Part shown: positions 6,283 through 27,445 of the stretch, in pieces | Layout of the letters: the number at the start of each line of letters is the position of its first letter | Numbering within the stretch: position 1 is the stretch's first letter | Translations under genes and position numbers: made by a program | Virus record (IMG/VR): IMGVR_UViG_3300044846_005229 | Span: 124,001 to 188,000 of that record | DNA length: 64,000 nt | Strand: one strand, 5' to 3' | The notes under the pieces: model-generated | Told to the model about the DNA's origin: nothing | The model's database searches: none | Seen by the model: the letters and a program-made list of their open reading frames with translations, nothing else

Positions 6283-6761
6283 GGTGCCCCTTGCTTGGTA
6301 CCTACATATTGTAGCACCCTGGCGGGGGCAATGTGGCCCTTGGTTCCTGGACTCGGGAAATCGTTACGGTTCGTCACATTGCCGCAGAAGTCGAAACCAT
6401 GGGAAAGCCCCGGAAACCGGGGCGGTGGAGTCATGCCAGGCGGATCAGCAAGTGGCAATCCATGCAGCCGCCTCGGCTTCGGTAAGGGGGCCAGCGATGC
6501 AGGTGCTGTCAACCTCAAAGCAGGAACGACGCTGCCACTCGTAGCCGAACCATGCGCCATCTTCCTGACGGATTGAGAAGCCGTAGCCGTTGCGGTCAAC
6601 TCGGCGGGTGGTGGCGGCGGTGGTCATGGTGCCCCTTGCTTGGTACCTACATATTGTAGCACCCTGGCGGGGGCAATGTGGCCCTTGGTTCCTGGACTCG
6701 GGAAATCGTTACGGTTCGTCACATTGCCGCAGAAGTCGAAACCATGGGAAAGCCCCGGAAA
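6269..6761 (+). repeat. 148-bp perfect direct repeat (6269-6416 and 6614-6761) containing a whole promoter module
   Basis: Base-by-base identity read from the sequence. Confidence 0.9.
6445..6627 (-). CDS. cassette gene, hypothetical
   Basis: Own promoter at 6653 (duplicated module). Confidence 0.7.
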   Translation of the reverse strand: MTTAATTRRVDRNGYGFSIRQEDGAWFGYEWQRRSCFEVDSTCIAGPLTEAEAAAWIATC

Positions 6762-6938
6762 TCACCAGCGGGCGGCCCAGACCTTAAGCTCAGCCAGGCT
6801 GTAGGTTGCCATGCAGCCAGCGAGGGTGCCATTCTCGACCCGGTGGACCCGGTACTGACCGAACCGGCGAGTAACCCTGACATCCGGGTGACTTGCGAAA
6901 AAATCTAGGATTTGATTGCTAGTGCTCAGGGTGGCCAT
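6762..6938 (-). CDS. cassette gene, 58-aa hypothetical
   Basis: MATLSTSNQILDFFASHPDVRVTRRFGQYRVHRVENGTLAGCMATYSLAELKVWAARW; promoter at 6965; below ORF-track cutoff. Confidence 0.65.
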   Translation of the reverse strand: MATLSTSNQILDFFASHPDVRVTRRFGQYRVHRVENGTLAGCMATYSLAELKVWAARW

Positions 6939-7207
6939 TTGCCGTTTGGTTGGTTGGCTTCGTAATTATAGCATGGTTGCCGGGGGTGCCGACGGGTTTG
7001 CCGGGGTTTTGTTACGTTTAGTAATAATGCCATGGGAGTAATACAAACGTATTAGCTCACCCGGTGAGGTTGCGCTTCGGGTGAGTTGTAACAAAACTTA
7101 ATAATCCGGTGAGTTTATTATCCGGTGGCGACACAAAACTTAACACATTGGGGCAGGGAGTTTAACGGCAATGAGTTAAGGGACCTAGTAGCAAGAACCT
7201 AGATAGC

Positions 7208-7230
7208 AAAAAGCCCCGGCGAACCGGGGC
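7208..7230 (-). terminator. rho-independent terminator, UUCG loop
   Basis: GCCCCGG-TTCG-CCGGGGC-TTTTT just after stop at 7243; near-copies at 10689-10712 and 14014-14037. Confidence 0.85.
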
Positions 7231-7242
7231 AGGGCCAGATAC

Positions 7243-7428
7243 TCAGCGGCGGTAGCAAAGTTCCCGGTGGAGTGCATTGGACCTTGCGATGCAGCCCCCA
7301 AGGCTCTCGGGGCGGATCCTGGCTTCGATGCCAAGGCGACGGATGGCCCGGTGGATTTCAGGGTCCGTCATCAGGGTGGCCTCTTTCTGCCAAGCGGTGA
7401 GATCAGCGATGGTAGCGACGGCGGGCAT
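7243..7428 (-). CDS. cassette gene, weak paralog of 6079-6282
   Basis: AT.AD.TAW...A..MTD.E shared N-terminus; own promoter at 7455. Confidence 0.65.
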   Translation of the reverse strand: MPAVATIADLTAWQKEATLMTDPEIHRAIRRLGIEARIRPESLGGCIARSNALHRELCYRR

Positions 7429-8028
7429 GGTGCGTTCCGGTGCGGTACTTACATATTATATGCCAGGGATGGATGGGTGTCAAGGCGCCGGTCGGTGAGT
7501 TTACGCCCTGTAACAATGCCGGTCGGCGAGTTTACGCTCCGGGTGTCGCGCTTCGGGTGAGTTGACTATCAGGTGGCGACACAAAACTTAACATATCAGG
7601 GCAGGGAGTTTGGCGGCAATGAGTTTACTGTCAGGTGGCGACACAAAACTTAACACACCCTGGCAAGGAGTAATACACTTGTACTAGCTTGCCCGGTGTT
7701 GCTCTCCGGTGTTGCTCTCCGATGAGTTGACTATCGGTGAGTTGACTACCGGGTGCGATGTTACAAAACTTTACATATCAGGGCAGGGAGTAATACACTT
7801 GTACTATCTCACCCGGCGGCAGTTTGACCGCAATGAGTTTACCGCGAGAGTAATACACTTGTACTATCTCACCCGGTGACAATACCCGATGGCAATACCC
7901 GATGCCAATGAGTTCGACCGCAATGAGTTTACCACGGGAGTAATGCTCTTGTACTATCTTCCCCAGTGGCAATACCCATGAAAAAACCCCGGCAAGGCCA
8001 GGGCAAGGTGGGAATTGGGCCGGAACCC

Positions 8029-8265
8029 CTAGGTAAGGGTCTCGATAGACTCGATAGACTGGCTCAGCATGCCCCTCAGCTGACGCAGGGTATCAAGGGT
8101 TTCATGGGCAGGGCGGAAGATGGCTTTGCCATCGGGGCGGTACACTTCCCTCAGGGACCCAATCAGGTTGGCCAGGGCGATTCCTTCGGTGACGGCCTTC
8201 TCCACGATTCGATCCACTTCGGCGGCGACGGGGGTGGTTACGGTGGCGGTAGTGGTGGTGGGCAT
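8029..8265 (-). CDS. cassette gene, hypothetical
   Basis: Start MPTTTT at 8265; promoter at 8293. Confidence 0.7.
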   Translation of the reverse strand: MPTTTTATVTTPVAAEVDRIVEKAVTEGIALANLIGSLREVYRPDGKAIFRPAHETLDTLRQLRGMLSQSIESIETLT

Positions 8266-8338
8266 GGGTGACTCCCGGTTGGTGACTCTGTAATTGTACC
8301 ATACGGCAGGCAGGGGGCGCAAGCCCCCCTTGGGCCAC

Positions 8339-8500
8339 TCATTCCCAGGTGGCACTAGCGACCCAGCCAGGGATCCCCCGGTCGGCAAAGCCGGAATTCA
8401 TCCGCTCTGCTTCGGCGATAGCGGCTTTCTTGTTAGGGGTCTCGTATAAGGTCTCGCGACCGGTTTCGGTGCAGAGGATGACGCGGTAGATGCGGGACAT
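8339..8500 (-). CDS. cassette gene, 53-aa hypothetical
   Basis: MSRIYRVILCTETGRETLYETPNKKAAIAEAERMN...; promoter at 8526. Confidence 0.6.
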   Translation of the reverse strand: MSRIYRVILCTETGRETLYETPNKKAAIAEAERMNSGFADRGIPGWVASATWE

Positions 8501-8662
8501 TTGCGGTTTGGTGCGGTACCTCGTAATTATAGCATGGTGCCATGGGGGTGGTCAACTCCTGGACTTTAATGGCTGGCAAGCATGGTGCCAACGGAACCGT
8601 CAACCCCATGGATTCTGCGGCAGGAAGGGGGCCCGGCAGGCAACCCCCCCCCCTAGGCACCC

Positions 8663-8797
8663 TCAGGCCTCGCCCACGACAATCCAACCCTTGGGTTTCC
8701 GGCTAAGGGGGCCAGTGTAGACGACTTGCTCAAGGAAACCTTCGCGGTTGGTGCGCTCAAGCAGCCACTGGCTGGGGGTGGTGGTTTTGGTGGCCAT
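8663..8797 (-). CDS. cassette gene, 44-aa hypothetical
   Basis: MATKTTTPSQWLLERTNREGFLEQVVYTGPLSRKPKGWIVVGEA; promoter at 8836. Confidence 0.6.
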   Translation of the reverse strand: MATKTTTPSQWLLERTNREGFLEQVVYTGPLSRKPKGWIVVGEA

Positions 8798-8870
8798 TGC
8801 GGTTCGGTGGGTGACTCCCGGTTGGTGACTCTGAGATTATAGCACGGATAGGCAGGGGGCGCAAGCCCCC

Positions 8871-9086
8871 TCAGGCAGGCATCGTGAAGTATGTATCCTC
8901 TGCGTCCCATCCTTGCTGGATAAGTTCTTCAATGCCCCGCTCCCCGTCTTCCTTGGAAGGGTGCAGCCAATTCAGCTCCCAGCTCCCATCGGAGCCAACC
9001 CGGAAAGTGGCACAGACGGTACCGGGTAGGAGGTGGTAGGGGTGGCCCTCAGGGCAGTAGCAGATGGAAGGGGTGGTTGTGGCCAT
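8871..9086 (-). CDS. cassette gene, hypothetical
   Basis: Start MATTTPSICYC; consensus promoter 9118-9146. Confidence 0.7.
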   Translation of the reverse strand: MATTTPSICYCPEGHPYHLLPGTVCATFRVGSDGSWELNWLHPSKEDGERGIEELIQQGWDAEDTYFTMPA

Positions 9087-9160
9087 GGGTGGTTGCCCTT
9101 GGTTGGTTGACTCTGTGATTATAGCATGGTTCCGGGGCAGTGTCAACCCCCTAGGAACCC

Positions 9161-9625
9161 TCAAACCGCAACCACAGCAACCTTGGCAGTCTTACGGGGG
9201 GCACGCTTGCGAGCAGGGGCAGGGGCCGGTGCAGGGGCGTCGGCGGTCGCAGAGGCCTTGGTTGCCTTGGTCGTCTTAGTCGTCTTGGCGCGGCTCTTAC
9301 GGGCAGGGGCCGGTGCAGCAGCCAGCAGGGCGATAGGGCCACTTGCGGCCATCAGGACGGGAACCTCAGCGGGCACGACAATTTCCTGGAACTCAATAGC
9401 GATGCCATCGATGGCTTCAACCGTGGCCCTAGCCAGGGCAGCCAACTGATCGTTGCGGGCATCGATAGCCTCGCGGGTTTGACAACCCAGATCATAGGCA
9501 GAGTCTGCCGTGATGGTGACCACGGCGATAGCGTAAGCGATCACAATGCCAGCAATGCGGGCAGCCTTCTCAAGGGTGGGGGCCCAATCGGCTTTCAGGA
9601 TGGTTGCGATGGTGGTGGTGGCCAT
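9161..9625 (-). CDS. cassette gene with K/A/P-rich basic C-terminal tail
   Basis: PARKSRAKTTKTTKATK...PARKRAPRKTAK; TTGACA-N17-TACAAT promoter. Confidence 0.7.
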   Translation of the reverse strand: MATTTIATILKADWAPTLEKAARIAGIVIAYAIAVVTITADSAYDLGCQTREAIDARNDQLAALARATVEAIDGIAIEFQEIVVPAEVPVLMAASGPIALLAAAPAPARKSRAKTTKTTKATKASATADAPAPAPAPARKRAPRKTAKVAVVAV

Positions 9626-10039
9626 GGGTGGCGTTTCGCTTGGGACCCCTTAATTGTAAGCCATGGGTGGCCGGGTGTCAAGGTGCTGGCGGTTTTGTTT
9701 GCATTTCGTAATAATGCCAGTGGGAGTAATACAAACGTACTAGCTCACCCGGTGAGTTTGCGCTTCGGGTGTCGCGGTCCGGTGAGTTTGCCGGTCGGTG
9801 AGTTTGCGGTCCGGTGAGTTTACGCTTCGAGTGTGATGTTACAAAACTTAACACATCGGGGCAGGGAGTTTGACGGCAATGAGTTAGCCGCCCGGTGTCA
9901 ACACAAAACTTAACATTCCGGTAGCAATTTGACGGCAATGAGTTAGCTATTGGGTGTCAACACACCATGGCAGGGAGCATGTGAAACCAGCATAAAGAAA
10001 GGCCGCCGATTGGCAGCCCTTTACTATGCGGACTTTCGT

Positions 10040-10429
10040 TCACAAAGGGTTGAAATTATCATCCACATCATCCATTCTTTCAAACGTAGGGCAATGTAGC
10101 AGATTGCCACTTTGTGCATACCCGTCGATGACATATTGTGAATATTGCTTAATGTTTTGAACAGCATCTTTGCTGTCTACTGTATCCACGAACTTGCCCA
10201 TGTTATAGTATGAAATCTGATCACCATTGTGGAAGTGATAAACCCTCTTTAGAATGAGACGCATCCCACTCACAAAGAACTCCATATCGACTTGACATTC
10301 GTCCCCCACCCCAAAGTATACGGGGAATGTATACAAATCGTTAGGGGAGGGATTAGCCCAAGGGCTGGAATTTTCCCACTGAAGGGTAACTGAAGTCGTC
10401 CCACGGGAAATGATCGAGGGGGTGGGCAT
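10040..10429 (-). CDS. cassette gene, hypothetical
   Basis: Own promoter at 10453 and downstream hairpin. Confidence 0.7.
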   Translation of the reverse strand: MPTPSIISRGTTSVTLQWENSSPWANPSPNDLYTFPVYFGVGDECQVDMEFFVSGMRLILKRVYHFHNGDQISYYNMGKFVDTVDSKDAVQNIKQYSQYVIDGYAQSGNLLHCPTFERMDDVDDNFNPL

Positions 10430-10732
10430 GGTGCGTTCCGGTTGACTCTGTAATTATAGCATGGGGCGGGAGCCTGCTGTGGGTTTCCGGGAGTTTTGTT
10501 TGCATTCCGTAATAATGCCGGGTCGGTGAGTTTACGCTTCGGTAAGTTGACTATCGGGTGCGATGTTACAAAACTTAACATTCCGGTGGCAGTTTGCGGT
10601 TCGGGTGTGATGTTACAAAACTTAACACATCATGGCAGGGAGTTTGACGGCAGGGAGTTAAACCTTGAACAGCAAAAATACCGACTACAAAAAGGTCCCG
10701 GCGAACCGGGACGGGTGGGGGGGCCAAGGCCA

Positions 10733-10963
10733 TCATGCGAAGCCGTAGCGTTGCATTAGGGCCTTAGTGGCAATGCGTTCTGCCCCCGTCATGTAGTCCA
10801 ACAGGTGTTCAGCGCCGTCTGCGGAGACCTCCTCGAATGCCTCTTCTTTCTTGATTCCATAGTGGCTGGAAATGTTGCCCAGAATGTTATCCCGGGTGGC
10901 TGCATCAATCGCAACGAGGAAAACGTAGTTCAGCCTGCCCTGGGGAACGGTGGTGGTGGTCAT
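10733..10963 (-). CDS. cassette gene, hypothetical
   Basis: Start MTTTTVPQG; promoter at 10989; UUCG terminator. Confidence 0.7.
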   Translation of the reverse strand: MTTTTVPQGRLNYVFLVAIDAATRDNILGNISSHYGIKKEEAFEEVSADGAEHLLDYMTGAERIATKALMQRYGFA

Positions 10964-11297
10964 TTGCCTTTCGGTGCGGGACCCCCTAATTGTAGCACAC
11001 TGCGGGGGCCTGCTGTGGGGTGCCGGTGGTTGTCGGTAGTTTTGTTTGCGTTTTGTTACCATTGGGAATTAGCCGCCAGGAGTAATACACTTGTACTAGC
11101 TCACCCGGTGGTATAATCCCGCAGGCACTTTACGCTTCGGGTTAGTTGTAACAAAACTTAATAATCCGGTGAGTTAACTACCGGGTGCCAACACAAAACT
11201 TAACACATCGTGGCAGGGAGTTTGACCGTAATGAGTTAAACCCCCAAACAGCAAGCCCCAGCAAAGCCAGGGCAGTAGCAACAACCTGATGCAACCC

Positions 11298-11504
11298 TCA
11301 ACCTCGCGCAACCCTGGCAAAGTCCAGATCGGGATAAACCACCAGCTCCCTAGGCAGGCTGCGGGCGCGACGGGCCCAGGCGTACTCGTCGGTGTACATC
11401 GCCTCGATGCGGGCATTATCACGGGCCACGACAGCGGTGATACGCTCACGGGCGGCAGCGCGGCGGTCGGAGGCGATCTGGGCGCGGTAGGTGGTGGGGG
11501 CCAT
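11298..11504 (-). CDS. cassette gene, hypothetical
   Basis: Promoter at 11532. Confidence 0.65.
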   Translation of the reverse strand: MAPTTYRAQIASDRRAAARERITAVVARDNARIEAMYTDEYAWARRARSLPRELVVYPDLDFARVARG

Positions 11505-11888
11505 TTGCCGTTTGGTGCGGTTGACTCTGTAATTGTAGCATATGGCCGGGGGTGCTGGGTGGTGCCGGTAGGTGCCGGGGGGTTTTGTTTACGTTTGGTT
11601 GCCATTGGGGGTTAGCCGCCAGGAGTAATACACTTGTACTAGCTCACCCGGTGAGTTTACGCTTCGGGTGTGATGTTACAAAACTTAACAATCCGGTGGC
11701 AGCTTCACGGCAATGAGTTAGCTATCCGGTGTCAACACAAAACTTAACATTTCTGGGGTAGCTTCACGGCAATGAGTTAGCTATCCGGTGTCAACACAAA
11801 ACTTAACACATCAAGGCAGGGAGTTTGACGACAAAGAGTTATCGCACCGGCCAGCAAAAAGCCCCCGGATGATGGAGGCAGTATGGGC

Positions 11889-12179
11889 TCAATCAACGAT
11901 AGCTGACCACTCGTTGGCATCAATGCCAGGGTGGACGTGTGCCTCGTAAAGACGGGTGCCGTCAGTGAGCTGGGCGACACAGAGGTAGTGATCTGTTTGG
12001 GCCATGCAACCAGCAATGTGGAGAACCGCGCCGGTTGCGGCGTGGCGAAAATCGGCAAGGTCGCTGATATAAGTGGTGCCGATGACAGCAGATTGCTTGC
12101 GCATGTACGGGGTGCTGGCACGCTCGGCAGCCTGCTCGGCGATGGTCAGAACCTCTTCGTCGGTGAGGGTGGTGGCCAT
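11889..12179 (-). CDS. cassette gene, hypothetical
   Basis: Start MATTLTDEE; promoter at 12208. Confidence 0.7.
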   Translation of the reverse strand: MATTLTDEEVLTIAEQAAERASTPYMRKQSAVIGTTYISDLADFRHAATGAVLHIAGCMAQTDHYLCVAQLTDGTRLYEAHVHPGIDANEWSAIVD

Positions 12180-12256
12180 GGGTGACTCCCGGTTGGTGAC
12201 TCTGTGATCATAGCATGGATGGGCCAGGGAACGCAAGCCCCCTAACCCCGTGGCGC

Positions 12257-12418
12257 TCAGGCGACTCTGACGTGGAGGCCCCGAGCGATCTCTTTAAGTT
12301 CGGACTCAGAGCGGAAAACCAGCATGAGCCAGAAATCTCCGGTGACTTCAAGATTGTTAGCCTTGATGACGTTCATGATGTCGTGGCGGAGGGCTTGCTT
12401 GCGTTGGGTGGTGGTCAT
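12257..12418 (-). CDS. cassette gene, conserved cyanophage small protein
   Basis: Start MTTTQRKQ; LEVTGDFWLMLVFRSESEL. Confidence 0.7.
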   Translation of the reverse strand: MTTTQRKQALRHDIMNVIKANNLEVTGDFWLMLVFRSESELKEIARGLHVRVA

Positions 12419-12468
12419 GGGTGGCTCCCGGTTGGTTGACTCTGTAATTATAGCACGGGGCCGTAGAG

Positions 12469-12702
12469 TCAGCAATAAGCGTTTAGAGATCCGTATGGAT
12501 TGGCCGAAAGATTGAAAAAACCCTCGTAGCTTTCCGCTTCAGTGCGTGCCATTGGCATCAATGGAGGGGGTGACTGAGAGGAGCCCCACTGGTGGCGATC
12601 ATTTGCTCTAGCGAGGTGATGATGATGCTTAATCCTGGAGCGTGTTTCACTCCAGTAGCAAGCGGTTCCATGAAAGTAGCCGTAGCCGGTCGAATTGGTC
12701 AT
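12469..12702 (-). CDS. cassette gene, hypothetical
   Basis: Start MTNSTGYGY; promoter at 12735. Confidence 0.6.
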   Translation of the reverse strand: MTNSTGYGYFHGTACYWSETRSRIKHHHHLARANDRHQWGSSQSPPPLMPMARTEAESYEGFFNLSANPYGSLNAYC

Positions 12703-12757
12703 GGGTGGTGATGCCGGTAGTTTGGGACTCCGCAATTATAGCATGAATGGCAGGGGG

Positions 12758-12964
12758 TTAGTCGTCGTTCCAGCATTGGCACCTAGGGTCAAGTACCCCA
12801 CAGCCCCGGCACGCCATCGAGATGAGACGCAATCGCTCGTCATCGCTTAGCTGTGCAAACTTAGCGGCAGCAGCCCCAAACTTACTTTCAACCGGCTTCC
12901 ATGACCCGTCTGGAGTGGTGCGAAACCAGAGAATGCCGCCCTCAAACTTCTCTTCGTAATACAT
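12758..12964 (-). CDS. cassette gene with C-terminal Cys cluster
   Basis: CRGCGVLDPRCQCWNDD; promoter at 12989. Confidence 0.7.
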   Translation of the reverse strand: MYYEEKFEGGILWFRTTPDGSWKPVESKFGAAAAKFAQLSDDERLRLISMACRGCGVLDPRCQCWNDD

Positions 12965-13087
12965 AGTGCCTTCGGGGTGGTGACTCTGTAATTATAGCAG
13001 GTTGGGGGCCGTAGCTGTGGGCGCTGTTGAGTTTTGTAACAATCGATGCGGAAAGGGGTCACCGGCTGGCAACCCCCCCCTTAGCAA

Positions 13088-13360
13088 TCAGCCCATCCCC
13101 GCAACCCTAGCAAGCTCTTGCATGGTGCAGGGGGAAGAACCCATCAGAGGCAAAATCGCAACTTCCATATGCGAATGCAGATTCTGCCAGCGAATAGCAG
13201 CAGCAGCAGCATCCTCAATGGACCAGCCTTCTACGGGGCCACCCTGCAGGAACCAGCGGCGCTGATGGGCTGTGGGGGTCTCAGGCTTGACGCGAGCCCA
13301 CAGGCGGTAGGTTGTTGCCGGGGCGGCGGGTTGCATCGGGGCGGTGGTTGCAGTAGCCAT
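13088..13360 (-). CDS. cassette gene, hypothetical
   Basis: Start MATATTAP; promoter at 13389. Confidence 0.65.
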   Translation of the reverse strand: MATATTAPMQPAAPATTYRLWARVKPETPTAHQRRWFLQGGPVEGWSIEDAAAAAIRWQNLHSHMEVAILPLMGSSPCTMQELARVAGMG

Positions 13361-13501
13361 CGTTGCGGTGTCGGTTGGGGACCTCGTAATTATAGCACAG
13401 GGGGCCAGAGAACACAATCCCTAACCCCTCGTGACGGCAGGCAGGGGGCCAACACAGTGTCAACCCCATGGCATTGTCAACCCTTGGGCATTGTCAACCC
13501 C

Positions 13502-13741
13502 TCAAACGGCAGCCAGGGCATCCAGGGCGGCAGCCAGGGCGGTGGAGGGGAAGTAGCGGTCCTCACCTTCGCAGATATCCGACAGGCACCAGCGGAAACC
13601 ACGACGGGTCGCATCAGCGGTCAGGATGTAGTCGGCACCTTTGAAGAAGGCACGGGATCCTTCGCTAAATTCCACACCGGCAGGGAGGCCTTTGCGGATG
13701 GCAGCGTTGATCATGGCGGAGGGGGTTGTGAGGCAGACCAT
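13502..13741 (-). CDS. cassette gene, hypothetical
   Basis: Promoter at 13768. Confidence 0.65.
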   Translation of the reverse strand: MVCLTTPSAMINAAIRKGLPAGVEFSEGSRAFFKGADYILTADATRRGFRWCLSDICEGEDRYFPSTALAAALDALAAV

Positions 13742-14064
13742 TTGCCGGGGGGGTGCGTTACCTCGTAATTATAGCACAGGGCCGAGGGTGCTGGGGGGTT
13801 GCCGGTAGGTGCCGGTGGTTTTGTTTACATCTGGTAACATTGCCGGTCAATGAGTTTGCAGTTCGGTGAGTTAACTATCGGGTGTGATGTTACATAACTT
13901 AACATACTGGGGCAGGGAGTTTAACGGCAATGAGTTTACTGCCAGGTGGCGACACAAAACTTAACACATCAAGGCAGGGAGTTTGACGACAAAGAGTTAT
14001 TGCACCGGCCAACAAAAAAAACCCCGGCGAACCGGGGCAGGGGCAGGGCAGTATCGGGGGGGTA

Positions 14065-14277
14065 TCAGCCTACGCCTTGTCCCCAGACGGTTAAGCAGCG
14101 GTCTCGGGCGACCCGGTAGGATTCAAGCTCCCTGCGGTTGAGATCCAACATGGGGCGATAACCGTTGATACCAGCCTCACATGCCGCTTTCCAAGCAGCC
14201 TCAGCACGGTCGATAGCGCATTGGGCGATATTAGCCCAAGCATCGGCGGAGATGGTTGCGGTGGTGGTGGGGGCCAT
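14065..14277 (-). CDS. cassette gene, hypothetical
   Basis: Start MAPTTT; promoter at 14302; UUCG terminator. Confidence 0.65.
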   Translation of the reverse strand: MAPTTTATISADAWANIAQCAIDRAEAAWKAACEAGINGYRPMLDLNRRELESYRVARDRCLTVWGQGVG

Positions 14278-14419
14278 TGCCGTTTGGTGCGGTACCCTGA
14301 AATTATAGCATGGTGCAGGGGCAATTGCGGGGTGCCGTTTGATGACGTTTGGTAACAATGCCGTTTGAGTAGTAGGTTTGTACTAGCTTGCCCGTGGTTT
14401 GTTTGCGGTCCGGGTGTGA

Positions 14420-14660
14420 TGTTACAAAACTTAACATTCCGATGGCAGTTTGTGAGTCTGTATTAACTACCCGGTGGCAACACAAAACTTAACATTCCGA
14501 TGGCAGTTTGTGAGTCTGTATTAACTACCCGGTGGCAACACAAAACTTAACATTCCGATGGCAGTTTGACGGCAAGGAGTTTACCATCAGGTGCCAACAC
14601 AAAACTTAACATTCCGATGGCAGTTTGACGGCAAGGAGTTTACCATCAGGTGGCAACACC
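14420..14660 (+). repeat. tandem amplification of the HLR1-like spacer unit (two 59-bp and two shorter copies)
   Basis: acaaaacttaacattccgatggcagtttg repeated four times. Confidence 0.9.
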
Positions 14661-14717
14661 ACGGCAAGGAGTAATACACTTGCACAAGTGTGTCCGGTGG
14701 TAATACCAGGTGTCAAT

Positions 14718-14793
14718 ATGGGGACTGTGGGGATCGAACCCAAACCTCCGCCGATTTATGAGATCGGAGCATTCACCAGATTGCTAAGCCCCC
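14718..14793 (-). tRNA. tRNA-Met/Ile2 (anticodon CAT), possibly degenerate
   Basis: Anticodon arm CCGAT-CTCATAA-ATCGG, GGTTCGATCC T-loop; G1 mismatch, weak T-stem, no CCA. Confidence 0.7.
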
Positions 14794-14822
14794 GTGTTTT
14801 CAGTTTGCCCTAGTTTGAGTTT

Positions 14823-14938
14823 TGTTGCGCTTCGTGATGATAGGCACGGCATGTTGCGCTTCGTGATGATGGGCATGGCATGTTGCGCTTCGTGGCGATA
14901 GGCACGGCATGTTGCGCTTCGTGATGGTAGGCATGGTG
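14823..14938 (+). repeat. 4 x 29-bp tandem repeat resembling the -10/leader module
   Basis: tgttgcgcttcgtgatgataggcacggca and variants at 14823, 14852, 14881, 14910. Confidence 0.85.
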
Positions 14939-14957
14939 CTGTTACGTTCTGCAACAT

Positions 14958-15215
14958 TCAAACCATTCTCACCATCGGGTGAAGATGCGAGCCGGTTTTC
15001 GGGTCTGGCGGATAGATTCGGAGGGTGATAACTTCGTCACCATACGCTTCGATGACATCCTCCAGACTGGGGAACCAGTCTCCAGTGTAGCCGTCTATGA
15101 CGCAGAATTCGTAGTCGTCGCCATCTGCATAACCATCGGCAAGAACCGGCGTGATATTGGCAGGCAGATCGCCCAACCTGGTGAGGATGGCATCCAGGGT
15201 AGTTGCGGTGACCAT
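14958..15215 (-). CDS. cassette gene, acidic hypothetical
   Basis: DGYADGDDYEF; promoter at 15241. Confidence 0.7.
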   Translation of the reverse strand: MVTATTLDAILTRLGDLPANITPVLADGYADGDDYEFCVIDGYTGDWFPSLEDVIEAYGDEVITLRIYPPDPKTGSHLHPMVRMV

Positions 15216-15497: not shown

Positions 15498-16094
15498 TTT
15501 TTTCTCCGGGGTGTCTGTCTATTGTAGCATAGTGCTGGGGGGTTGGGGTTTGCGGGTCGGGTGCCTCGGGATGGATGCCAGGGGTTGGATTCCAGGGGTT
15601 GGATTCCAGGGGTATCGTTGACTCCTAGGGGTGAGGTGGACAGTTTGTTAAGTGTCCATCTGACCTAAAGGAGTATCGTGCCAGGGAGTTTGGTGCCCAA
15701 GGGTTAGTGCCAGTATTAGACTTTGGGTGCGTTTTATGAGTAATGTGGAACCTCAGGGTGCTTTTTGCGAGTAATGTGGAACGCCCCAAAATAAAAATCG
15801 AAAATTCAATCCTTGAGATCGACTGCAGCGGAACGGAGTTACTCCTAAAAAAATTAAAAATTTTAGGACCTAGTTGAAATCCATCCAAAAAATTCTACAT
15901 TTGAATGCATATTATGCACCCTACTACTATAATCGCATATAAATTATTTAATAGAGTGTACTTATGTTAGTTGTACAATCAATAAGTTTTTCTTATTCTT
16001 AGGTACAATCAATGAGTTAAGGGCCAGAAGACAAAAAAAAAGGGGGGATAACCCTAAGGCAATCCCCCATTCTTTGTACTAAGTTTATCGCCAA

Positions 16095-17808: not shown

Positions 17809-17962
17809 TGCGGTTCGGTGTGGGACCCCTTAATTATTACACATCGGTAGGCAGAACGCAAGAGGCCGGGTCGTTTGTTTGCGTTTTGTGACAGTGCCAC
17901 GCGAGTAGTATGTTTGTACTAACTGACCCGGTATCAATACCAGTAGGCAATGAGTTTGCCTA

Positions 17963-18256: not shown

Positions 18257-19183
18257 TGTTGCCGGTGGTTGGTTGGCTCCGTAATTATAGCACATTGCCT
18301 CGGGGGTTGGGGCCCCGGATTGCTGACTCCCAAGGTGTGGTGGACAGTTTGTAAACTGTCTATTTGACTTCGTGAGTTTGACTTTTAGGGTTTGATTCTG
18401 GGGTGTGTTTTCGGGGTCAATGTGGAATCTCAGAGTGCTTTTTGCAGGTAATGTAGAATGCCTAATTTGAAAAGTCTGAAAGTCAACCGCTGAGATCGAC
18501 TGCAGGGCAACGGAGTTACTCCTAAAAAAATTAAAAATTTTAGGACCTAGTGAAAAACGATCCAAAAAATTCTACATTTGAATGCATATTCTGCACCCTA
18601 GGGTCTTTATATACACTTTTTCGCGAATATATGTATAATAAGTGTTTATTCTATGTTGTTATAGTTTGTTGTTGATGAGTCCAAGTAATAAACAACTGGG
18701 ATACGGTCTCAACAGTCTCAGTTAAGTATCGGAATGATGTCACACTTCAAGAGTAAGCAGATGGGTGCGTTTTTCCAGTAATGTAGAAACCCGGGGTGCA
18801 TTTTGCCGGTAATGTAGAATGCCCCAAATTAAAAACCTGAAATTCAATCCCTGAGATCGACTGCAGGGGAACGGAGTTACTCCTAAAATTTTTGAATTTT
18901 TTAGGACCTAATGGAAAACCATCCAAAAAATTCTACATTTGAATGCAAATTCTGCACCCTACTACTATATACTCGCGTAAAAATTATTTAATAGAAGACT
19001 CTTATCTTAATGTCTAGACAGATAAGTAATTCTTATCAATCTAATCCCCCATCAAACCGCAATGTTGTGGGCTATTCGAGGATGCTAACCGGAGTCTCAC
19101 CAAATAGCAAAGGGGCCGATGCCTAAGCACCAACCCCCAAACATTAAACTAAGGTCAATCTAAGGCCAAACCAAAGTCCGAAT

Positions 19184-19523: not shown

Positions 19524-19590
19524 GGCATCAATCCCAGGGCATCAATCCCAGGGCATCAATCCCAGGGCATCAATCCCAGGGCATCATCCC
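19524..19590 (+). repeat. 14-bp tandem repeat gcatcaatcccagg (4-5 copies)
   Basis: Direct reading; related units at 38440-38500. Confidence 0.8.
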
Positions 19591-20265: not shown

Positions 20266-20568
20266 TCAGCGACACTGACTTAGCGGTGTAGGATCAAAGT
20301 GAATATCCCGCTCGATGCGGAGCCCAGCTGGTCCCCGAGTAGCTTCTAGGTCATTCAGGTTGAAGTACCCAAGTTCTCGTGCCTGGCCGATAACCAACCC
20401 AAAGCATTGACCCGTCGCAGGGTCCATCTCGGTGAGGTACCATGTCCAATTGCCCCAGGGCGTGAAAAATTTGGCATAGGCGGTAGCCTCCATGCCTTTG
20501 CCGTCTTGTGCGTACAGGGCTGGGACCTTGGTGGCGATTGCCATGGTTAGTAGCTTGGTGTTGGCCAT
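20266..20568 (-). CDS. DUF2958 family protein
   Basis: KFFTPWGNWTWYLTEMDP...FGLV...ELGYFNL. Confidence 0.8.
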   Translation of the reverse strand: MANTKLLTMAIATKVPALYAQDGKGMEATAYAKFFTPWGNWTWYLTEMDPATGQCFGLVIGQARELGYFNLNDLEATRGPAGLRIERDIHFDPTPLSQCR

Positions 20569-20731
20569 GGTTGCCCTTGGTTGGTTGACTCAGGTATTAT
20601 AGCACGGATGGGGATGGTGCCGTTACGATCTGAAACAACAGGCATGGACCACAGGCAGGCAGGCCCCCGCCCGACAAGTTGACTTCGGTATTATAGCACA
20701 GGCAGGCAGGGGGCGCAAGCCCCCCCACAGG

Positions 20732-21642: not shown

Positions 21643-22149
21643 TTTTCTAAGGAAGCGAATGGGCCGGGTTTGGTCCCGATGCACTAATCATAGCACATTG
21701 CCACGGGGTTGGGGCCTTGGGTAGGGGCCTTGGGGTTGTTGACTCCTGGGGTGTGGTGGTTGCTGTGGGGTTGCTGTGGGGGTTGAGTATCTGGGGTTGT
21801 TGACTCCCAAGGTGTGGTGGACAGTTTGTAAACTGTCTATTTGCGTTGGGAGTTTGGTACCGAGGGTGTGTTTTCGGAGTTAATGTGGAACCTCAGGGTG
21901 CATTTTCCGGGTAATGTAGAATGCCCCAAATTGAAAACCTGAAATTCAATCCCTGAGATCCATTGCGGGGGAACGGAGTTACTCCTAAAAAAATTAAAAA
22001 TTTTAGGACCTAGTGAAAAACGATTCAAAAAATTCTACATTTGAATGCAAATTCTGCACCCTGGGGCTCTTTATATACACTTTTTCGCGAATATATGTAT
22101 AATGAGTGTTTACCTTATGTTGTTATAGTTTGTTGTTGATGGGTCCAAG

Positions 22150-22335: not shown

Positions 22336-22795
22336 CTCAGGGTAAATATGGCAGGTATTTTCGGAGTTAATGTGGAACCTTGGGGTGCGTTTTGTGAGTA
22401 ATGTGGAATGTTGAGTGCAGTTTTCGGAGTAATGTGGAAACCACAAAATCAAAAAACCAAAATCCATTCCTTGAAATCGACTGCAGGGCAACGGAGTTAC
22501 TCCTAAAATTTTTGAATTTTTTAGGACCTAATGAAAAAACGATCCAAAAGTTCCACATTTGAATGCAAATTCTGCACCCTACTACTATATACTCGCGTAA
22601 AAATTATTTATAGTACACCCTTATCTAAATATCCATAATCAATAAGTTACCCTTATCTATGTACCAACCAATGAGTAATAGCGGTAAAGCAACAAAAAAA
22701 GGAGGGTCACCTTTCGGCAGCCCCCATATCAGTAAGTATTTATATTTACTGGGTGAAATTAGACCCCGGAACCAACAACCCCGGCAGCCCGACCT

Positions 22796-23498: not shown

Positions 23499-23573
23499 TA
23501 TTGGTCAGGGTGTTGCTGGTGTGGTCGATGGTAGTATAGCACGGATAGGCGAGTTGCCGGGGACCCCCGAAAG

Positions 23574-24001: not shown

Positions 24002-24271
24002 TCATGCCATGAACTTAGCAATAGCCTCTTCGGCATCGGCACCATCGGCACCATGATTTACCATAAACTCCAACACAAGGCCAGTATCACTATCGAATCG
24101 CGTCAGAAGGGAATCCAACAGTTCATCTTGACTGACACCACCAGAGGCATTCTGAAGCTCTGACATCCTGCTGTCCATGGCTTCATTCCTAAGCTCATCA
24201 AGGCTCATCAAATCGACATAACGTTGGCAATGGGCTTCGGCGATCTCACGAATCAAGGATTGGTCGAACAT
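24002..24271 (-). CDS. cassette gene, acidic helical protein
   Basis: Promoter at 24301. Confidence 0.7.
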   Translation of the reverse strand: MFDQSLIREIAEAHCQRYVDLMSLDELRNEAMDSRMSELQNASGGVSQDELLDSLLTRFDSDTGLVLEFMVNHGADGADAEEAIAKFMA

Positions 24272-24397
24272 GGTTGCGTGTGCGGTTGGTTGACTTCGGT
24301 ATTATAGCACAGGGGGGGCCACGGTGCGAGGGATGTTACAGGGGTAACAACAGGCACGGCAAGGGGCCAGGGTTCACAACCCCGACCCCCAGGACAG

Positions 24398-24772: not shown

Positions 24773-24866
24773 TGTTTCCGGTGGGTGCGATACCTTGAAA
24801 TTATAGCATGTTTCCAAGGGGGTCAGGGTGCATCCCAACCACAAAACTGCCTATTAGCAACAAAAC

Positions 24867-25202
24867 TTAACCCATAATGCCCCCAGGCCAACGTCCTCCC
24901 GGCGGGGTGCGCTCTGATGGGGATAGTTCGGGTGTTTCATCATAATAGCTAGGACACAATTTGGCGAGGCGCTCTGCGTCGGAGACGCATTGGCAGCATG
25001 GATTGTGCCTATTTTCCGCCATATAATTAGCGCCGCGCTTTGTTCTGAATGGTCCGATAACTGCCATGAAGTGTGGGGTATTGGCTTTGGTAGGGGTAAC
25101 TACCGATTTGAAAACCTCCAATTTACCTTGGCCGTATGGCAAACCCACATAGAATTTTGCCCGTTGGGGTGTGTTGGTGGTTGAGGGGGTTGCGGTAGCC
25201 AT
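24867..25202 (-). CDS. cassette gene, hypothetical
   Basis: Promoter at 25233. Confidence 0.65.
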   Translation of the reverse strand: MATATPSTTNTPQRAKFYVGLPYGQGKLEVFKSVVTPTKANTPHFMAVIGPFRTKRGANYMAENRHNPCCQCVSDAERLAKLCPSYYDETPELSPSERTPPGGRWPGGIMG

Positions 25203-26264
25203 CGTTGCGGTGTCGGTTGGTTGGCTTCGTAATTATAGCACATGGACGGGTCTGGATGCGGTTCGGCATGTTGGTGCGGTTCGGCATGTTGACTCCTGGG
25301 GTGTGGTGGACAGTTTGTAAACTGTCTATTTGCGTTGGGGGTTTGACTTTAGGGGCTTGATTCCAGGGTGTATTTTAGGGGTTAATGTATAATCCGGGGT
25401 GCGTTTTCCGGGTAATGTAGAATGCCTAATTTGAAAAGTCCGAAAGTCAACCGCTGAGATCGATTGCAGGGCAACGAGTTTACTCCTAAAATTTTTGAAT
25501 TTTTTAGGACCTAGCGAAAAACCATCCAAAAAATTCTACATTTGAATGCATATTTTGCACCCTGGGGTCTTTATATACACTTTTTCGCGAATATATGTAT
25601 AATAAGTGTTTACCTTATGTTGTTGGTGAGTTGAATAGTTGACGACTGGGTGTGATCTCGTCAGTCTCAGTTAAGTATCGGAATGAGTTCACATCGAGTA
25701 GTCTACAGTTGGCATCAGCCCCAACGGTCTCAGTTAAGTATCGGAATGAGACTCCACCAAATAGTAAACAACTGGGGTACGGTCTCAACAGTCTCGTTTC
25801 AGTCCCACAACAAGACTCATCCAAATAGTAAACAACTGGGGTACGGTCTCAACAGTCTCACTTCAATCTCACAATGAGATCACACTTCAAGAGTAAGCAG
25901 ATGGGTGCGTTTTTCCAGTAATGTAGAAACCCAGGGTGCATTTCCCAAGTAATGCAGAAACCCTAAAATCAAAAACCCGAAACTCAATCCCTGAGATCGA
26001 CTGCAGCGGAACGGAGTTACTCCTAAAAAAATTAAAAATTTTAGGACCTTTTCAAAAACAGCATGAAAAATTCTACATTTGAATGCATATTTTGCACCCT
26101 ACTACTATATACTCGCGTAAAAATTATTTATAGTACACTCTTATCTAAATATCCATAATCAATAAGTTATCCTTATCTATGTACCAACCAATGAGTAATA
26201 GCAGTAAGGCAACAAAAGAAAGGGGGGAATCACCCTAAGGCAATCCCTCCCCTAAAAACAGCAC

Positions 26265-26450
26265 CTATGCCCAAATGGTCTCAACACGGGCATCATGCCC
26301 TTTCATCTTCATCGCTTCGGCGATTCTCTGAGCCACGTTCCGATCATGGTAATCCGCCCTGGTGGTATAGCCAGGAGCCCCAGAACCAGGGGCAATCGAA
26401 CCAGTGGCAATCGAACCAGGGGCGATGGTGACACGGTGTAGTTGGGCCAT
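26265..26450 (-). CDS. cassette gene, hypothetical
   Basis: Promoter at 26484; hairpin plus T-run at 26213-26250. Confidence 0.6.
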   Translation of the reverse strand: MAQLHRVTIAPGSIATGSIAPGSGAPGYTTRADYHDRNVAQRIAEAMKMKGHDARVETIWA

Positions 26451-26518
26451 GGTGCGGTTTGGTGCGGTTGGTATGGACGTATCTTAGCACAGGTCCGAGG
26501 GGAACGTCAACCCCCCCC

Positions 26519-26950
26519 TTACCCGTACCACCCATACTGGCGAACCCTCTCCAAATAGGTCTCCCAAACCGACGGATCCATGGCACCTGCCGTTGTCTTA
26601 AAGTGATGGGAGAAAAACGTAATGGCAAGCTCCATATTGCGCCTACCAACAGGATTAGCAGAATGAATGACCACAGCCGGTGGAATAAACCCACCATCAA
26701 AACCATTCTCATACACAATTTGCTCAATCCACTTGCAAACATCCATGCCAGTTCCCCTAGCGTCATCCCCGAGATCATGATCCAAGGATACAACTTCGAC
26801 ATTGCCAGTCTTCAGCAATTCGATAACCTCATCAGGCCAATAGCAACGGACCCACCCATCAGGGGTAGGCCTGATATCATCGAGAAATACTTTCATTGCC
26901 TTGGGTTTAGGTAGACTGTGGGCGTGGTTGCCATTGGGGGTGGTTGCCAT
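26519..26950 (-). CDS. cyclic-phosphate-processing receiver-domain protein
   Basis: KVFLDDIR, SLDHDLG, GTGMDV..W, IHSANPVG motifs. Confidence 0.8.
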   Translation of the reverse strand: MATTPNGNHAHSLPKPKAMKVFLDDIRPTPDGWVRCYWPDEVIELLKTGNVEVVSLDHDLGDDARGTGMDVCKWIEQIVYENGFDGGFIPPAVVIHSANPVGRRNMELAITFFSHHFKTTAGAMDPSVWETYLERVRQYGWYG

Positions 26951-27445
26951 TGGGGGTGGTCCGGTGGGTGACGGTAGGGGAATTATAGCATAGGCCTGGC
27001 AGGTTAGTTGGTGGCCCCGTAATTATAGCACAGGGGGGTCAGGCTACGGGTGCCGTTACATTCCGTAACAACAGGTACGGCAAGGAGTCACTGGATGGCA
27101 ACCCCTGTAAAGAATTGGCCAGGTTGTGGGGTTATGCTTTCGCTCCTGAAGGGTAGCCAGGCGAAGAAGGGCAGCCCTGCGGCTGATAATCCTAATTCCA
27201 TTTCCCACTATTTGCCTTCACGTCTACCTGTATTTTGGGTTGTTTAGCCATTGTAGCATGGGCCTGGCAGTGTCAACTCATGGCGTTAACTGAGTTTACT
27301 GCAACATGGTTGCCGTTGGTTGGTGGCGATTGGGTTTGAACCCATTGTTTGCGGGGGGCTGGTGGGCTGGTGATAGGGGAATTGTAGCATGGCCCGGCAG
27401 GTTGGATGGTTTACTTTGGTAGTATAATACGAACCCGATAGGCAG

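What the first reader, a model, noticed from the sequence alone, without database searches (positions are those of the whole stretch)
6362..27070. Promoter-proximal TGTTAC-N5-GTAACA-like site at recurring distances, often where the -35 is poor
Seen, with approximate positions relative to the inferred start: CGTTACGGTTCGTCACA 6362 (-61 to -77), GTTACGTTTAGTAAT 7011 (-53 to -67), 7499 (-51 to -67), 9696 and 10497 (-50 to -68), 11043, 11586 and 13822 (-61 to -78), 14341, 20621, 24334, 27054. The two main groups differ by about 10-11 bp, one helical turn. Several of these promoters (6965, 10453) have no recognisable -35. Known: RpaB is reported to activate from sites at roughly -45 to -66. Inference: a subclass of cassettes is activator-dependent, using the same factor the spacer repeats would bind. 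That would give a self-limiting timer as decoy sites multiply.
Basis: partly seen in the sequence, partly recalled or inferred. Interest (0 to 1): 0.6.

Follow-up and report, generated by a model that had tools for sequence, protein, structure and literature searches.

The report
Light-regulator-like sites upstream of phage promoters
A giant freshwater phage, probably of a cyanobacterium, carries a short DNA motif at about 50, 61 or 71 bases upstream of some of its small-gene promoters; the motif looks like the binding site of the host's light-sensing regulator RpaB, so the phage may tie these genes to the host's light state, but nothing here shows binding.

Summary
The window lies in a complete 279-kb lake-water phage. 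About 50 small minus-strand genes at 6-31 kb each have their own TGCTATAAT promoter. Sixteen of these promoters carry the motif upstream, and it is about tenfold commoner than chance and confined to this region. In about 38 related metagenomic arrays (65 non-redundant cases) its centre peaks near -48, -60 and -70. It goes with a poor -35: 4 of 65 with the motif have a passable -35, against 57 of 175 without (p about 1e-5).

The motif reads better as an HLR1-type direct repeat, KTTAC(G/A)TT-NN-GT(a)ACAAT, than as a palindrome, and the spacer repeats belong to the same family. In that frame the sites span -53..-70, -41..-58 and -63..-80. The first equals a validated RpaB-activated promoter and the second sits at the published activation peak.

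Cautions:
- All these promoters have an extended -10, so a poor -35 does not show they need an activator.
- The copies are paralogous, so the statistics overstate independence.
- The 10-bp steps come from copy-number changes of a 10-11-nt unit.
- One orthologous promoter lacks the site in two relatives.
- The host is only inferred.

RpaB-type activation is the best reading (about 0.4). The "decoy timer" is untested.

The parts
6363..6380 (+). HLR1-like site GTTACGGTTCGTCACATT, spanning -62..-79 of the minus-strand promoter with -10 at 6308-6313 (gene 6079-6282)
   Evidence: It has 3 of 16 mismatches to the HLR1 consensus, and the -35 scores 3 of 6.
6708..6725 (+). Exact duplicate of the 6363 site, upstream of the promoter with -10 at 6653-6658 (gene 6445-6627)
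7011..7028 (+). HLR1-like site GTTACGTTTAGTAATAAT, spanning -53..-70 of the promoter with -10 at 6965-6970 (gene 6762-6938). No usable -35.
   Evidence: The orthologous promoter in G001 and L052 lacks this site.
7500..7517 (+). Site TTTACGCCCTGTAACAAT, spanning -52..-69 of the promoter with -10 at 7455-7460 (gene 7243-7428). This promoter has a perfect TTGACA -35 but no TG extension.
9698..9715 (+). Site TTTGCATTTCGTAATAAT, spanning -52..-69 of the promoter with -10 at 9653-9658 (gene 9161-9625). Perfect -35, no TG extension.
10499..10516 (+). Site TTTGCATTCCGTAATAAT, spanning -53..-70 of the promoter with -10 at 10453-10458 (gene 10040-10429). The -35 scores 2 of 6.
   Evidence: The site is identical in G001.
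11045..11062 (+). Site TTTGCGTTTTGTTACCAT, spanning -63..-80 of the promoter with -10 at 10989-10994 (gene 10733-10963)
11588..11605 (+). Site TTTACGTTTGGTTGCCAT, spanning -63..-80 of the promoter with -10 at 11532-11537 (gene 11298-11504). The doubled GGTGCCGGTA unit lies between the site and the core promoter.
13026..13043 (+). Weak site GTTGAGTTTTGTAACAAT (poor left half), spanning -42..-59 of the promoter with -10 at 12991-12996 (gene 12758-12964)
13824..13841 (+). Best -70-class site TTTACATCTGGTAACATT (2 of 16 mismatches to HLR1), spanning -63..-80 of the promoter with -10 at 13768-13773 (gene 13502-13741)
   Evidence: In the G001 orthologue only non-core positions differ.
14342..14359 (+). 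Site ATGACGTTTGGTAACAAT (degenerate left half), spanning -47..-64 of the promoter with -10 at 14302-14307 (gene 14065-14277)
17878..17895 (+). Site TTTGCGTTTTGTGACAGT, spanning -52..-69 of the promoter with -10 (AATAAT) at 17833-17838 (gene 17629-17808).
20622..20639 (+). Second site type (flank AACAGGCA...), GTTACGATCTGAAACAAC, spanning -33..-50 of the promoter with -10 at 20596-20601 (gene 20266-20568, DUF2958). It also lies in the leader of an upstream tandem promoter at 20690.
24335..24351 (+). Second-type site with a spacer one base shorter (GTTAC-AGGG-GTAAC), centred near -48 of the promoter with -10 at 24301-24306 (gene 24002-24271)
   Evidence: It is the only site whose RNA fold stands out (z = -2.5).
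27055..27072 (+). Second-type site GTTACATTCCGTAACAAC, the only perfect GTTAC-N5-GTAAC. It spans -40..-57 of the promoter with -10 at 27022-27027 and is centred near -87 of the tandem promoter at 26982 (gene 26519-26950, cREC_REC domain).
5938..14613 (+). Spacer arrays holding 21 copies of (GTT/AAC/GAC)ACAAAACTTAACA, all on the + strand. One is a perfect HLR1 at 7760-7777 and seven have at most 2 mismatches. Each array lies between an intrinsic terminator and a site-bearing promoter.
11553..11580 (+). Example of the 10-nt GGTGCCGGTA-type unit, doubled here, whose copy number (1, 2 or 3) sets the -60, -70 or -79 distance classes
   Evidence: An independent 11-nt duplication is seen in G001 at 41135.

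Best explanation
The site is an upstream protein-binding element of the OmpR-family direct-repeat type: two 8-nt half-sites with a 10-bp period. It most likely binds the host cyanobacterium's response regulator RpaB, as an HLR1-type site.

It belongs to a paralogous family of phage promoter modules. Each module has the HLR1-like site, then G/T-rich 10-nt units, then a conserved CCCACAGC box where the -35 should be, then TGCTATAAT. The module heads the first small gene after each terminator plus spacer array.

Bound at about -50, -61 or -71, on one face of the helix, the regulator would contact RNA polymerase and raise transcription from these -35-less extended -10 promoters while it is DNA-binding competent. 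For RpaB that means low or normal light. The arrays further upstream carry more sites of the same family. Recombination shuffles the modules between cassettes.

Shown here: the motif, its orientation, its enrichment, its distance classes, its link to weak -35 elements, the shuffling, and the absence of a recognisable phage-encoded OmpR-type regulator.

Inferred: that any protein binds, that the protein is RpaB, that binding activates, and that the host is a cyanobacterium.
For: - Enrichment and location: 16 matches against 1.6 expected, confined to the cassette region.
- Word test that does not presuppose the motif: the site's 5-mers (GTTTG, TTTAC, TAACA, GTAAC, AATGC) are the words most enriched at -40..-97 of weak -35 promoters compared with strong ones.
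- Matrix of 62 non-redundant sites: the positions that were not used to pick the sites are conserved as HLR1 predicts. Both hexamers are followed by W-W (73-89% A/T, against a rough local A/T background of about 42%), and the 2-nt linker is variable. The base a palindrome requires at -1 (T) is present in only 12 of 62.
- HLR1-consensus matches with at most 2 mismatches are about tenfold denser in the cassette region, and all ten lie on the + strand.
- The TTAACA half-site occurs in accepted Synechocystis HLR1s, for example ScpB (PMC6331805).
- Positions: spans -53..-70 and -41..-58 match the validated cas10 HLR1 (-70..-53) and the -51 activation peak. Over 65 sites the vector strength is 0.65 at a period of 10-10.5 bp.
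- The -35 association has Fisher p about 1e-5.
- Orthologous sites in G001 differ only at non-core positions.
- The phage has no PF00486, PF00072 or HTH_3 protein, and the 44 cassette proteins have no DNA-binding domain in Pfam.
- A cyanobacterial host is suggested by the phage CysRS, whose best named hits are cyanobacteria at 47-50% identity. The single top hit (58%) is a contig binned as Mesorhizobium, perhaps a misbinned phage. A pentapeptide-repeat protein and lake-water sources point the same way.
Against: - There are no binding, transcription-start or expression data.
- Proximal sites carry 2-4 mismatches of 16 to HLR1, with systematic departures: G at position 6 of the first repeat and A at position 3 of the second.
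- The -70 class and the -40 site fall outside the published activating window.
- All site-bearing promoters have TGn plus a near-consensus -10, which suffices without a -35 in E. coli (established knowledge). Other -35-less promoters in the region have no site.
- The copies are paralogous, so p-values, periodicity and column conservation are inflated by descent.
- The distance steps arise from 10-11-nt unit copy number in a region full of tandem repeats.
- Promoter 6965 keeps an identical core in G001 and L052 but lacks the site there, with only a 3-mismatch remnant one turn closer.
- The host is not identified.
Confidence: 0.4

Rival explanations
1. The site is not selected for function. It is the promoter-proximal, partly decayed end unit of the spacer repeat arrays. 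Duplication and homologous recombination carry it along with the promoter module, and its 'recurring distances' simply reflect shared descent plus slippage of a 10-11-nt tandem unit.
For: - One large homologous cluster spans -39 to -79.
- The -60, -70 and -79 series differs by 1, 2 or 3 copies of GGTTGCCGGT-like units.
- The region holds 37 tandem-repeat rows.
- Cassette joints in other lake populations fall within about 25 nt of the sites, for example 9714>11600, 10485>11581, 10518>11621 and 13805>14329.
- The orthologous promoter 6965 does without the site.
- Array copies conserve a 13-nt block that includes the linker, as recent duplicates would.
Against: - Within the sites the half-site cores and the W-W positions are kept while the linker and position 12 vary, and orthologues differ only at non-core positions.
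- Neutral slippage elsewhere in the region uses periods of 12-18, 29-31 and 58-64 nt, but between site and promoter the period is 10-11 nt, and this arose twice independently (GGTGCCGGTA in G000, GGTTTGCCGTT in G001).
- The sites persist next to otherwise unrelated flanks in many metagenomes.
- The site goes with missing -35 elements.
Confidence: 0.3
2. A phage-encoded DNA-binding protein of an unrecognised fold, not host RpaB, binds both the proximal sites and the arrays. It might switch this promoter subclass during the infection programme or organise this part of the genome.
For: - A 279-kb phage with hundreds of unannotated small proteins could encode one. Of the 44 cassette proteins, Pfam reports only five families, each hit by a single protein.
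- The phage does encode a sigma-70-family protein, so it reprograms transcription.
- The systematic departures from HLR1 (G at position 6, A at position 12) could reflect a different protein.
- The site-bearing promoters share a conserved CCCACAGC box in place of the -35, reminiscent of T4 middle promoters, where a MotA box replaces the -35 (the T4 comparison is from general knowledge).
Against: - No OmpR-type winged helix, receiver domain or Cro/CI HTH is found anywhere in the phage, and no DNA-binding Pfam domain in the cassette proteins.
- The motif's 8+2+8 architecture and half-site sequence match a known host factor closely.
- The -10 is a host primary-sigma consensus.
Confidence: 0.15
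3. The site acts negatively or as a sink rather than as an activator. RpaB-type protein bound at -70 or -40, and in the arrays, would repress, roadblock or simply titrate the regulator, and the promoters would be constitutive extended -10 promoters.
For: - The published rule says HLR1 outside -66..-45 represses. The -70 class and the 20622 site fall outside that range.
- Two sites of the second type (flank AACAGG) lie downstream of a tandem upstream promoter (20690 and 26982), where a bound protein could block it.
- TGn plus TATAAT needs no activator.
- Each genome carries about 37 sites of the family.
Against: - Sites centred at -60 to -71 do not overlap RNA polymerase, so simple occlusion is unlikely.
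- The -50 and -61 classes, which are the majority, sit exactly where RpaB activates.
- The link with a missing -35 is what activator-assisted promoters show.
Confidence: 0.1

Closest known systems
HLR1 (high light regulatory 1) element bound by the OmpR-type regulator RpaB in cyanobacteria (PMC6525291; bioRxiv 10.1101/2023.12.07.570523; PMC6331805)
   Same: Both have two 8-nt direct repeats (G/T)TTACA(T/A)(T/A) with a 2-nt linker. The array copies have 0-2 mismatches. The proximal sites share the period, the conserved W-W positions and the variable linker. TTAACA half-sites occur in accepted HLR1s. Upstream positions -53..-70 and about -51 are those from which RpaB activates. HLR1 motifs have already been reported in cyanophage genomes (PMC6525291).
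   Different: Proximal sites have 2-4 mismatches, with G instead of A at position 6 and usually A instead of T at position 12. One class is centred at about -71 and one site at about -41, both outside the reported activating window. All copies have one fixed orientation and occur in arrays, in a phage hypervariable region rather than upstream of photosynthesis genes. Binding is untested.
Class I activator-dependent promoters (E. coli CRP at -61.5, -71.5, -82.5; established knowledge, also invoked for RpaB in PMC6525291)
   Same: Site centres fall at about -50.5, -61.5 and -71.5, with one at about -80.5. This is one face of the helix, upstream of promoters with a poor -35.
   Different: The motif is a direct repeat rather than a CRP-type palindrome. 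The core promoters have an extended -10 and may not need help. The phasing may be a by-product of a 10-nt repeat unit.
PeSLs, the promoter-early stem-loop cassettes of T4-type phage hyperplastic regions (PMC2839356, PMC4122927)
   Same: Both are arrays of small, mostly unknown genes, each with a strong, near-identical sigma-70-type promoter. About 8 of the promoters here overlap a GC-rich terminator hairpin (GGGGGCTTGCGCCCCC). Cassettes are shuffled between close relatives by recombination at the conserved regulatory modules.
   Different: This phage has an extra promoter subclass with an upstream HLR1-like site and long spacer arrays, which PeSLs lack. Whether the phage is T4-type was not tested, and mini-circles were not looked for.
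Host transcription-factor sites used by cyanophages: NtcA boxes and PhoB (Pho) boxes (general knowledge, not verified here)
   Same: The idea is the same: phage promoters are wired to a host global regulator that reports physiological state.
   Different: The regulator and signal differ (light or redox rather than nitrogen or phosphate). NtcA's GTA-N8-TAC does not fit these sites. No arrays of sites are described for those cases.

Membership tests
HLR1 / RpaB binding site | Two imperfect 8-nt direct repeats (G/T)TTACA(T/A)(T/A) | tested here: inconclusive
   Array copies show 0-2 mismatches of 16, with a perfect one at 7760. Proximal sites show 2-4 mismatches for the well-formed sites and 7 for two degenerate ones (23887, 24335). 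The consensus is KTTAC(G/A)TT..GT(a)ACAAT. The W-W positions are conserved although they were not used to select the sites.
HLR1 / RpaB binding site | Repeats separated by 2 unspecified nucleotides (10-bp period) | tested here: met
   The period is 10 bp in all sites but one (24335 has 9). The linker positions carry the least information.
HLR1 / RpaB binding site | RpaB binds the site (EMSA or ChIP) | not testable with these tools
   No binding assay is available, and the complex predictor does not take DNA.
HLR1 / RpaB binding site | The organism that reads the site has RpaB, i.e. the host is a cyanobacterium | tested here: inconclusive
   The phage CysRS is closest to cyanobacterial CysRS among named organisms (47-50% identity), and there is a pentapeptide-repeat protein. 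The sources are lake water. No psbA or nblA was found, and no direct link to a host.
RpaB-activated promoter | HLR1 centre between -66 and -45 of the transcription start | tested here: inconclusive
   Met by the -50 and -61 classes, not by the -71 class or the -41 site. Transcription starts are inferred from the -10 only.
Class I activator-dependent promoter | Activator sites on one helical face, spaced by whole turns | tested here: met
   Peaks lie at -48/49, -59/60 and -69/70, with vector strength 0.65 at 10-10.5 bp over 65 sites. The sites are not independent, because the copies are paralogous.
Class I activator-dependent promoter | The core promoter is too weak to fire without the activator | tested here: inconclusive
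   The -35 is poor, but TGn plus TATAAT or TACAAT is present in all. The 6965 orthologues lack the site.
   Position -1 is T in only 12 of 62 sites, whereas its mirror position 15 is A in 48 of 62. Positions 6-8 are T-T-Y and not self-complementary. Only 27055 is a true palindrome.
NtcA box and CRP box | GTA-N8-TAC, or TGTGA-N6-TCACA | tested here: not met
   By inspection of the site consensus, the sites read TAC-N7-GTA, the opposite order, and TGT-N11-ACA, one base too long.
PeSL-type mobile regulatory cassette | Strong sigma-70-like promoter joined to a terminator stem-loop, flanking small genes, with recombination between copies | tested here: met
   There are about 50 TGCTATAAT promoters. 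A hairpin overlaps the -35 in about 8 (8293, 8836, 12207, 16460, 16845, 17588, 20690, 20945). Cassette content differs from G001, and joints lie at the modules in other populations. The site-bearing subclass itself has no hairpin.

The most novel reading that the evidence does not exclude
The phage carries about 37 RpaB-type sites per genome (16 promoter-proximal, 21 in arrays), all in one orientation, in its hypervariable small-gene region, and these do two jobs. First, they put a subclass of small takeover or anti-defence genes under activation by the host's essential light and redox regulator, from helically phased positions. Second, as the genome replicates, they titrate that regulator. 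Titration would push the cell into a high-light-like expression state, lower RpaB-activated functions (in Synechocystis these include a type III CRISPR-Cas operon), and shut the same phage promoters off again.
Probability: 0.12. Interest if true: 0.8.

Novelty: new variant of a known kind. Interest (0 to 1): 0.5.

Why it matters
If the sites are read by RpaB, a large freshwater cyanophage would be timing part of its accessory gene set by the host's light and redox state through the host's own essential regulator. Arrays of the same site would also make regulator titration by a replicating phage genome directly testable. It would add a light/redox case to the known nitrogen (NtcA) and phosphate (PhoB) cases of cyanophage promoters wired to host regulators. 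The module also shows how a regulatory site can travel with a promoter through a recombining cassette region. If the sites are only repeat debris, the region is still a clear non-T4 example of PeSL-like cassette shuffling.

Tried and rejected
- Palindrome reading: rejected as the best description, because the unselected positions do not mirror each other.
- NtcA, CRP and cyanobacterial LexA boxes: spacing or half-sites do not fit (inspection of the consensus; the LexA box is from memory).
- RNA hairpin or terminator role of the site: folds are no better than shuffles (z = -0.6 to +0.8) except for the shortened 24335 variant (z = -2.5), and no T-run follows.
- Known RNA families: only the tRNAs match.
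- Promoters inside the arrays: only weak 9-of-12 matches were found, and this was not pursued.
- Phage-encoded regulator: PF00486, PF00072, HTH_3 and a Pfam scan of 44 cassette proteins gave nothing except a sigma-70-family ORF outside the window.
- Cyanophage hallmarks psbA and nblA: absent.
- Nucleotide search against isolated phages: no match. A beta-clamp protein search gave only distant hits.
- Relatives in IMG/VR by cassette proteins: only G001 was found.
- HLR1-like hits elsewhere in the genome (252074, 79014 and others): no clear relation to a promoter.
- The published HLR1 weight matrix could not be obtained as text, so the consensus with mismatch counts was used instead.
- Read laying was run on 5,901 bases. 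All the runs were contigs, so no transcript ends could be read.

Full report
**Where the window lies.** The window is bases 124,001-188,000 of a 279,339-bp virus record with direct terminal repeats, rated complete. It is found almost word for word in many lake-water metagenomes. All genes in the window are on the minus strand. Among them are a cysteinyl-tRNA synthetase, a DNA polymerase III beta clamp, a pentapeptide-repeat protein and four tRNAs.

The synthetase's best named relatives are cyanobacteria at 47-50% identity. The one stronger hit (58%) is a contig binned as Mesorhizobium, perhaps a misbinned phage. The phage has no psbA or nblA, and no isolated phage is close. A cyanobacterial host is therefore probable but inferred.

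**Anatomy of the region.** Between about 6 and 31 kb lie some 50 small genes of 40-180 codons. Each has its own promoter of the form TGCTATAAT (or TGCTACAAT) and a similar short leader. I see three promoter classes:
- About 12 have a good -35 (GGGGTTGACA).
- About 8 have a GC-rich terminator hairpin (GGGGGCTTGCGCCCCC) lying over the -35.
- The rest have no -35.

On the minus strand, the long intergenic spacer arrays always follow an intrinsic terminator and precede a promoter of the third class. Pfam matched only five of the 44 cassette proteins, one family each: cREC_REC, DUF2958 and DnaJ, plus weak DUF5710 and SnoaL-like hits.

**Checking the observation.** I found further copies at 6708 (an exact duplicate), 17878, 13026 and 23887 (both weak) and 14941.

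GTTAC-N5-GTAAC with at most one mismatch occurs 16 times against 1.6 expected, and a looser form 31 times against 1.6. In the whole genome, 18 of 29 matches with at most two mismatches fall in the 21 kb of this region. So the motif is real and local.

**More sequences.** A 53.8-kb IMG/VR fragment (G001) is syntenic at 88-93% identity but differs in cassette content. A pattern search for the promoter leader in metagenome contigs returned 114 loci, about 38 of which are related cassette arrays. From these I took 349 promoters and reduced them to 260 non-redundant ones.

**Distances.**
- -48/-49 (11 cases)
- -59/-60 (17 cases)
- -69/-70 (13 cases)

There are a few at -39/-40, -54, -57, -67/-68 and one at -79. 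Vector strength is 0.65 at a period of 10-10.5 bp.

These promoters are paralogues, however. One homologous cluster spans -39 to -79, and the -60, -70 and -79 series differs by one, two or three copies of a 10-nt GGTTGCCGGT-like unit. A separate 11-nt duplication occurs in G001. The region is full of tandem repeats of other periods. Helical phasing is therefore observed, but selection for it is not shown.

**The -35 link.** Among promoters with the TG extension, 4 of 65 with a site reach 4 of 6 matches to TTGACA, against 57 of 175 without a site (Fisher p about 1e-5). A word test that does not presuppose the motif gives the site's own 5-mers as the words most enriched upstream of weak -35 promoters.

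The two window promoters that have both a site and a perfect -35 (7455 and 9653) are the two without the TG extension.

Every site-bearing promoter without a -35 still has TGn plus a near-consensus -10. By established E. coli knowledge that can work without a -35, so "poor -35" is not evidence of dependence on an activator.

**What the motif is.** A count matrix of 62 distinct sites gives KTTAC(G/A)TT-Yn-GT(a)ACAAT. The pentamers were used to pick the sites, so they say little. The unselected positions are informative:
- Both hexamers are followed by two A/T positions (73-89% A/T).
- The two linker positions are the most variable.
- The T that a palindrome needs before the left half is present in only 12 of 62 sites.

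This is the 8+2+8 direct-repeat layout of HLR1, (G/T)TTACA(T/A)(T/A)-NN-(G/T)TTACA(T/A)(T/A), the RpaB site (PMC6525291).

The spacer repeat GTTACAAAACTTAACA is the same family. There are 21 copies in the window, all on the + strand, including one perfect HLR1 at 7760. HLR1-consensus matches with at most two mismatches are about ten times denser here than in the rest of the genome. The recurrent TTAACA or GTAACA second half is within known variation: the Synechocystis ScpB HLR1 reads TTACAATAGTTAACAT (PMC6331805).

**Positions in the HLR1 frame.** The classes span -53..-70, -41..-58 and -63..-80. The first is identical to the HLR1 of the RpaB-activated cas10 promoter, whose mutation abolishes activity and RpaB binding (bioRxiv 10.1101/2023.12.07.570523). 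The second sits on the -51 peak of the activating range, -66 to -45. The third lies one turn beyond that range.

**Who could bind.** The phage has no OmpR-type winged helix, no receiver domain and no Cro/CI-type HTH. The cassette proteins show no DNA-binding domain. The phage does encode a sigma-70-family protein far from the window. The sites do not fold better than shuffled sequence as RNA, and no Rfam family matches. A host factor reading DNA is the simplest candidate.

**Evidence that weakens a functional reading.**
- The core of promoter 6965 is identical out to about -41 in G001 and in a third relative (L052), yet both lack the site and carry only a three-mismatch remnant one turn closer.
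- In other lake populations, contig joints between cassettes fall within about 25 nt of the sites. The sites are therefore the conserved islands at which cassettes recombine, much as PeSLs are in T4-type phages (PMC2839356).
- That would by itself explain why the site travels with the promoter at fixed distances.

**Verdict.** The site is best read as an HLR1-type, OmpR-family direct repeat belonging to a mobile promoter module, most likely bound by host RpaB and most likely stimulatory (about 0.4). Repeat debris carried by recombination is the main rival (about 0.3). The decoy-timer idea remains untested. Under the best reading, this is a new variant of a known kind: host-regulator sites in cyanophage promoters, and PeSL-like cassettes.

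Noticed in passing
window 18343-18360, 21820-21837, 25309-25326 (variant at 15639-15656): A perfect 18-bp palindrome, GACAGTTTGTAAACTGTC, lies upstream of other -35-less promoters at variable distances (-57 to -133 across relatives). It sits at the edge of an AT-rich repeat of about 330 bp. It looks like a second, distinct operator-like element.
   Followed up: partly
window 15725-16054, 18283-18600, 22383-22711, 25185-25563, 25903-26227: Several copies of an AT-rich element of about 330 bp are interspersed among the GC-rich cassettes and are also present in G001. Its nature is unknown: a mobile element, or a small gene with its own TATAGT promoter.
   Followed up: no
window 14823-14958, next to tRNA-Met at 14719-14793: A 29-nt tandem repeat (3.8 copies, TGTTGCGCTTCGTGATGATAGGCACGGCA), plus one better copy at 14941, lies directly upstream of the tRNA-Met gene. 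Each unit is a degenerate copy of the second site type (the one flanked by AACAGG).
   Followed up: partly
window, about -37..-30 of site-bearing promoters (e.g. 10476-10483, 11012-11019): Site-bearing promoters share a conserved CCCACAGC box (GCTGTGGG on the + strand) exactly where the -35 should be. It may be shared descent or a second recognition element.
   Followed up: partly
window 8293, 8836, 12207, 16460, 16845, 17588, 20690, 20945 (-10 positions): In about 8 promoters the -35 region is a GC-rich hairpin (GGGGGCTTGCGCCCCC) that probably terminates the upstream gene. This is a compact terminator-promoter unit like a PeSL.
   Followed up: partly
window 9000-14900, compared with four lake or sediment runs: Many contig joints skip or reorder cassettes relative to this genome, so cassette content varies between populations. 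One run on record as RNA holds contigs of this region, but transcription is not shown.
   Followed up: partly
window 26519-26950 and 20266-20568: Two genes under the second site type (flanked by AACAGG) encode a cREC_REC (cyclic-phosphate processing receiver) domain protein and a DUF2958 protein. This hints that the cassettes include conflict or anti-defence functions.
   Followed up: no
genome 15,927-16,502 (outside the window; L295:1438-2013, minus strand): The phage encodes a 191-aa sigma-70-family protein. Region 2 scores above the Pfam cut-off and region 4 is weak.
   Followed up: partly
window 13458-13501 and 19524-19590: Tandem repeats lie just upstream of other promoters. One is 2.6 copies of a 17-nt unit containing the -35 (GGGGTTGACA on the minus strand). 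The other is 4.9 copies of GGCATCAATCCCAG.
   Followed up: no
window 27575-27740: A 12-nt unit (GCCCCCGACAGA) is repeated about 14 times inside ORF 27446-27811, so the protein would carry a repeated tetrapeptide.
   Followed up: no
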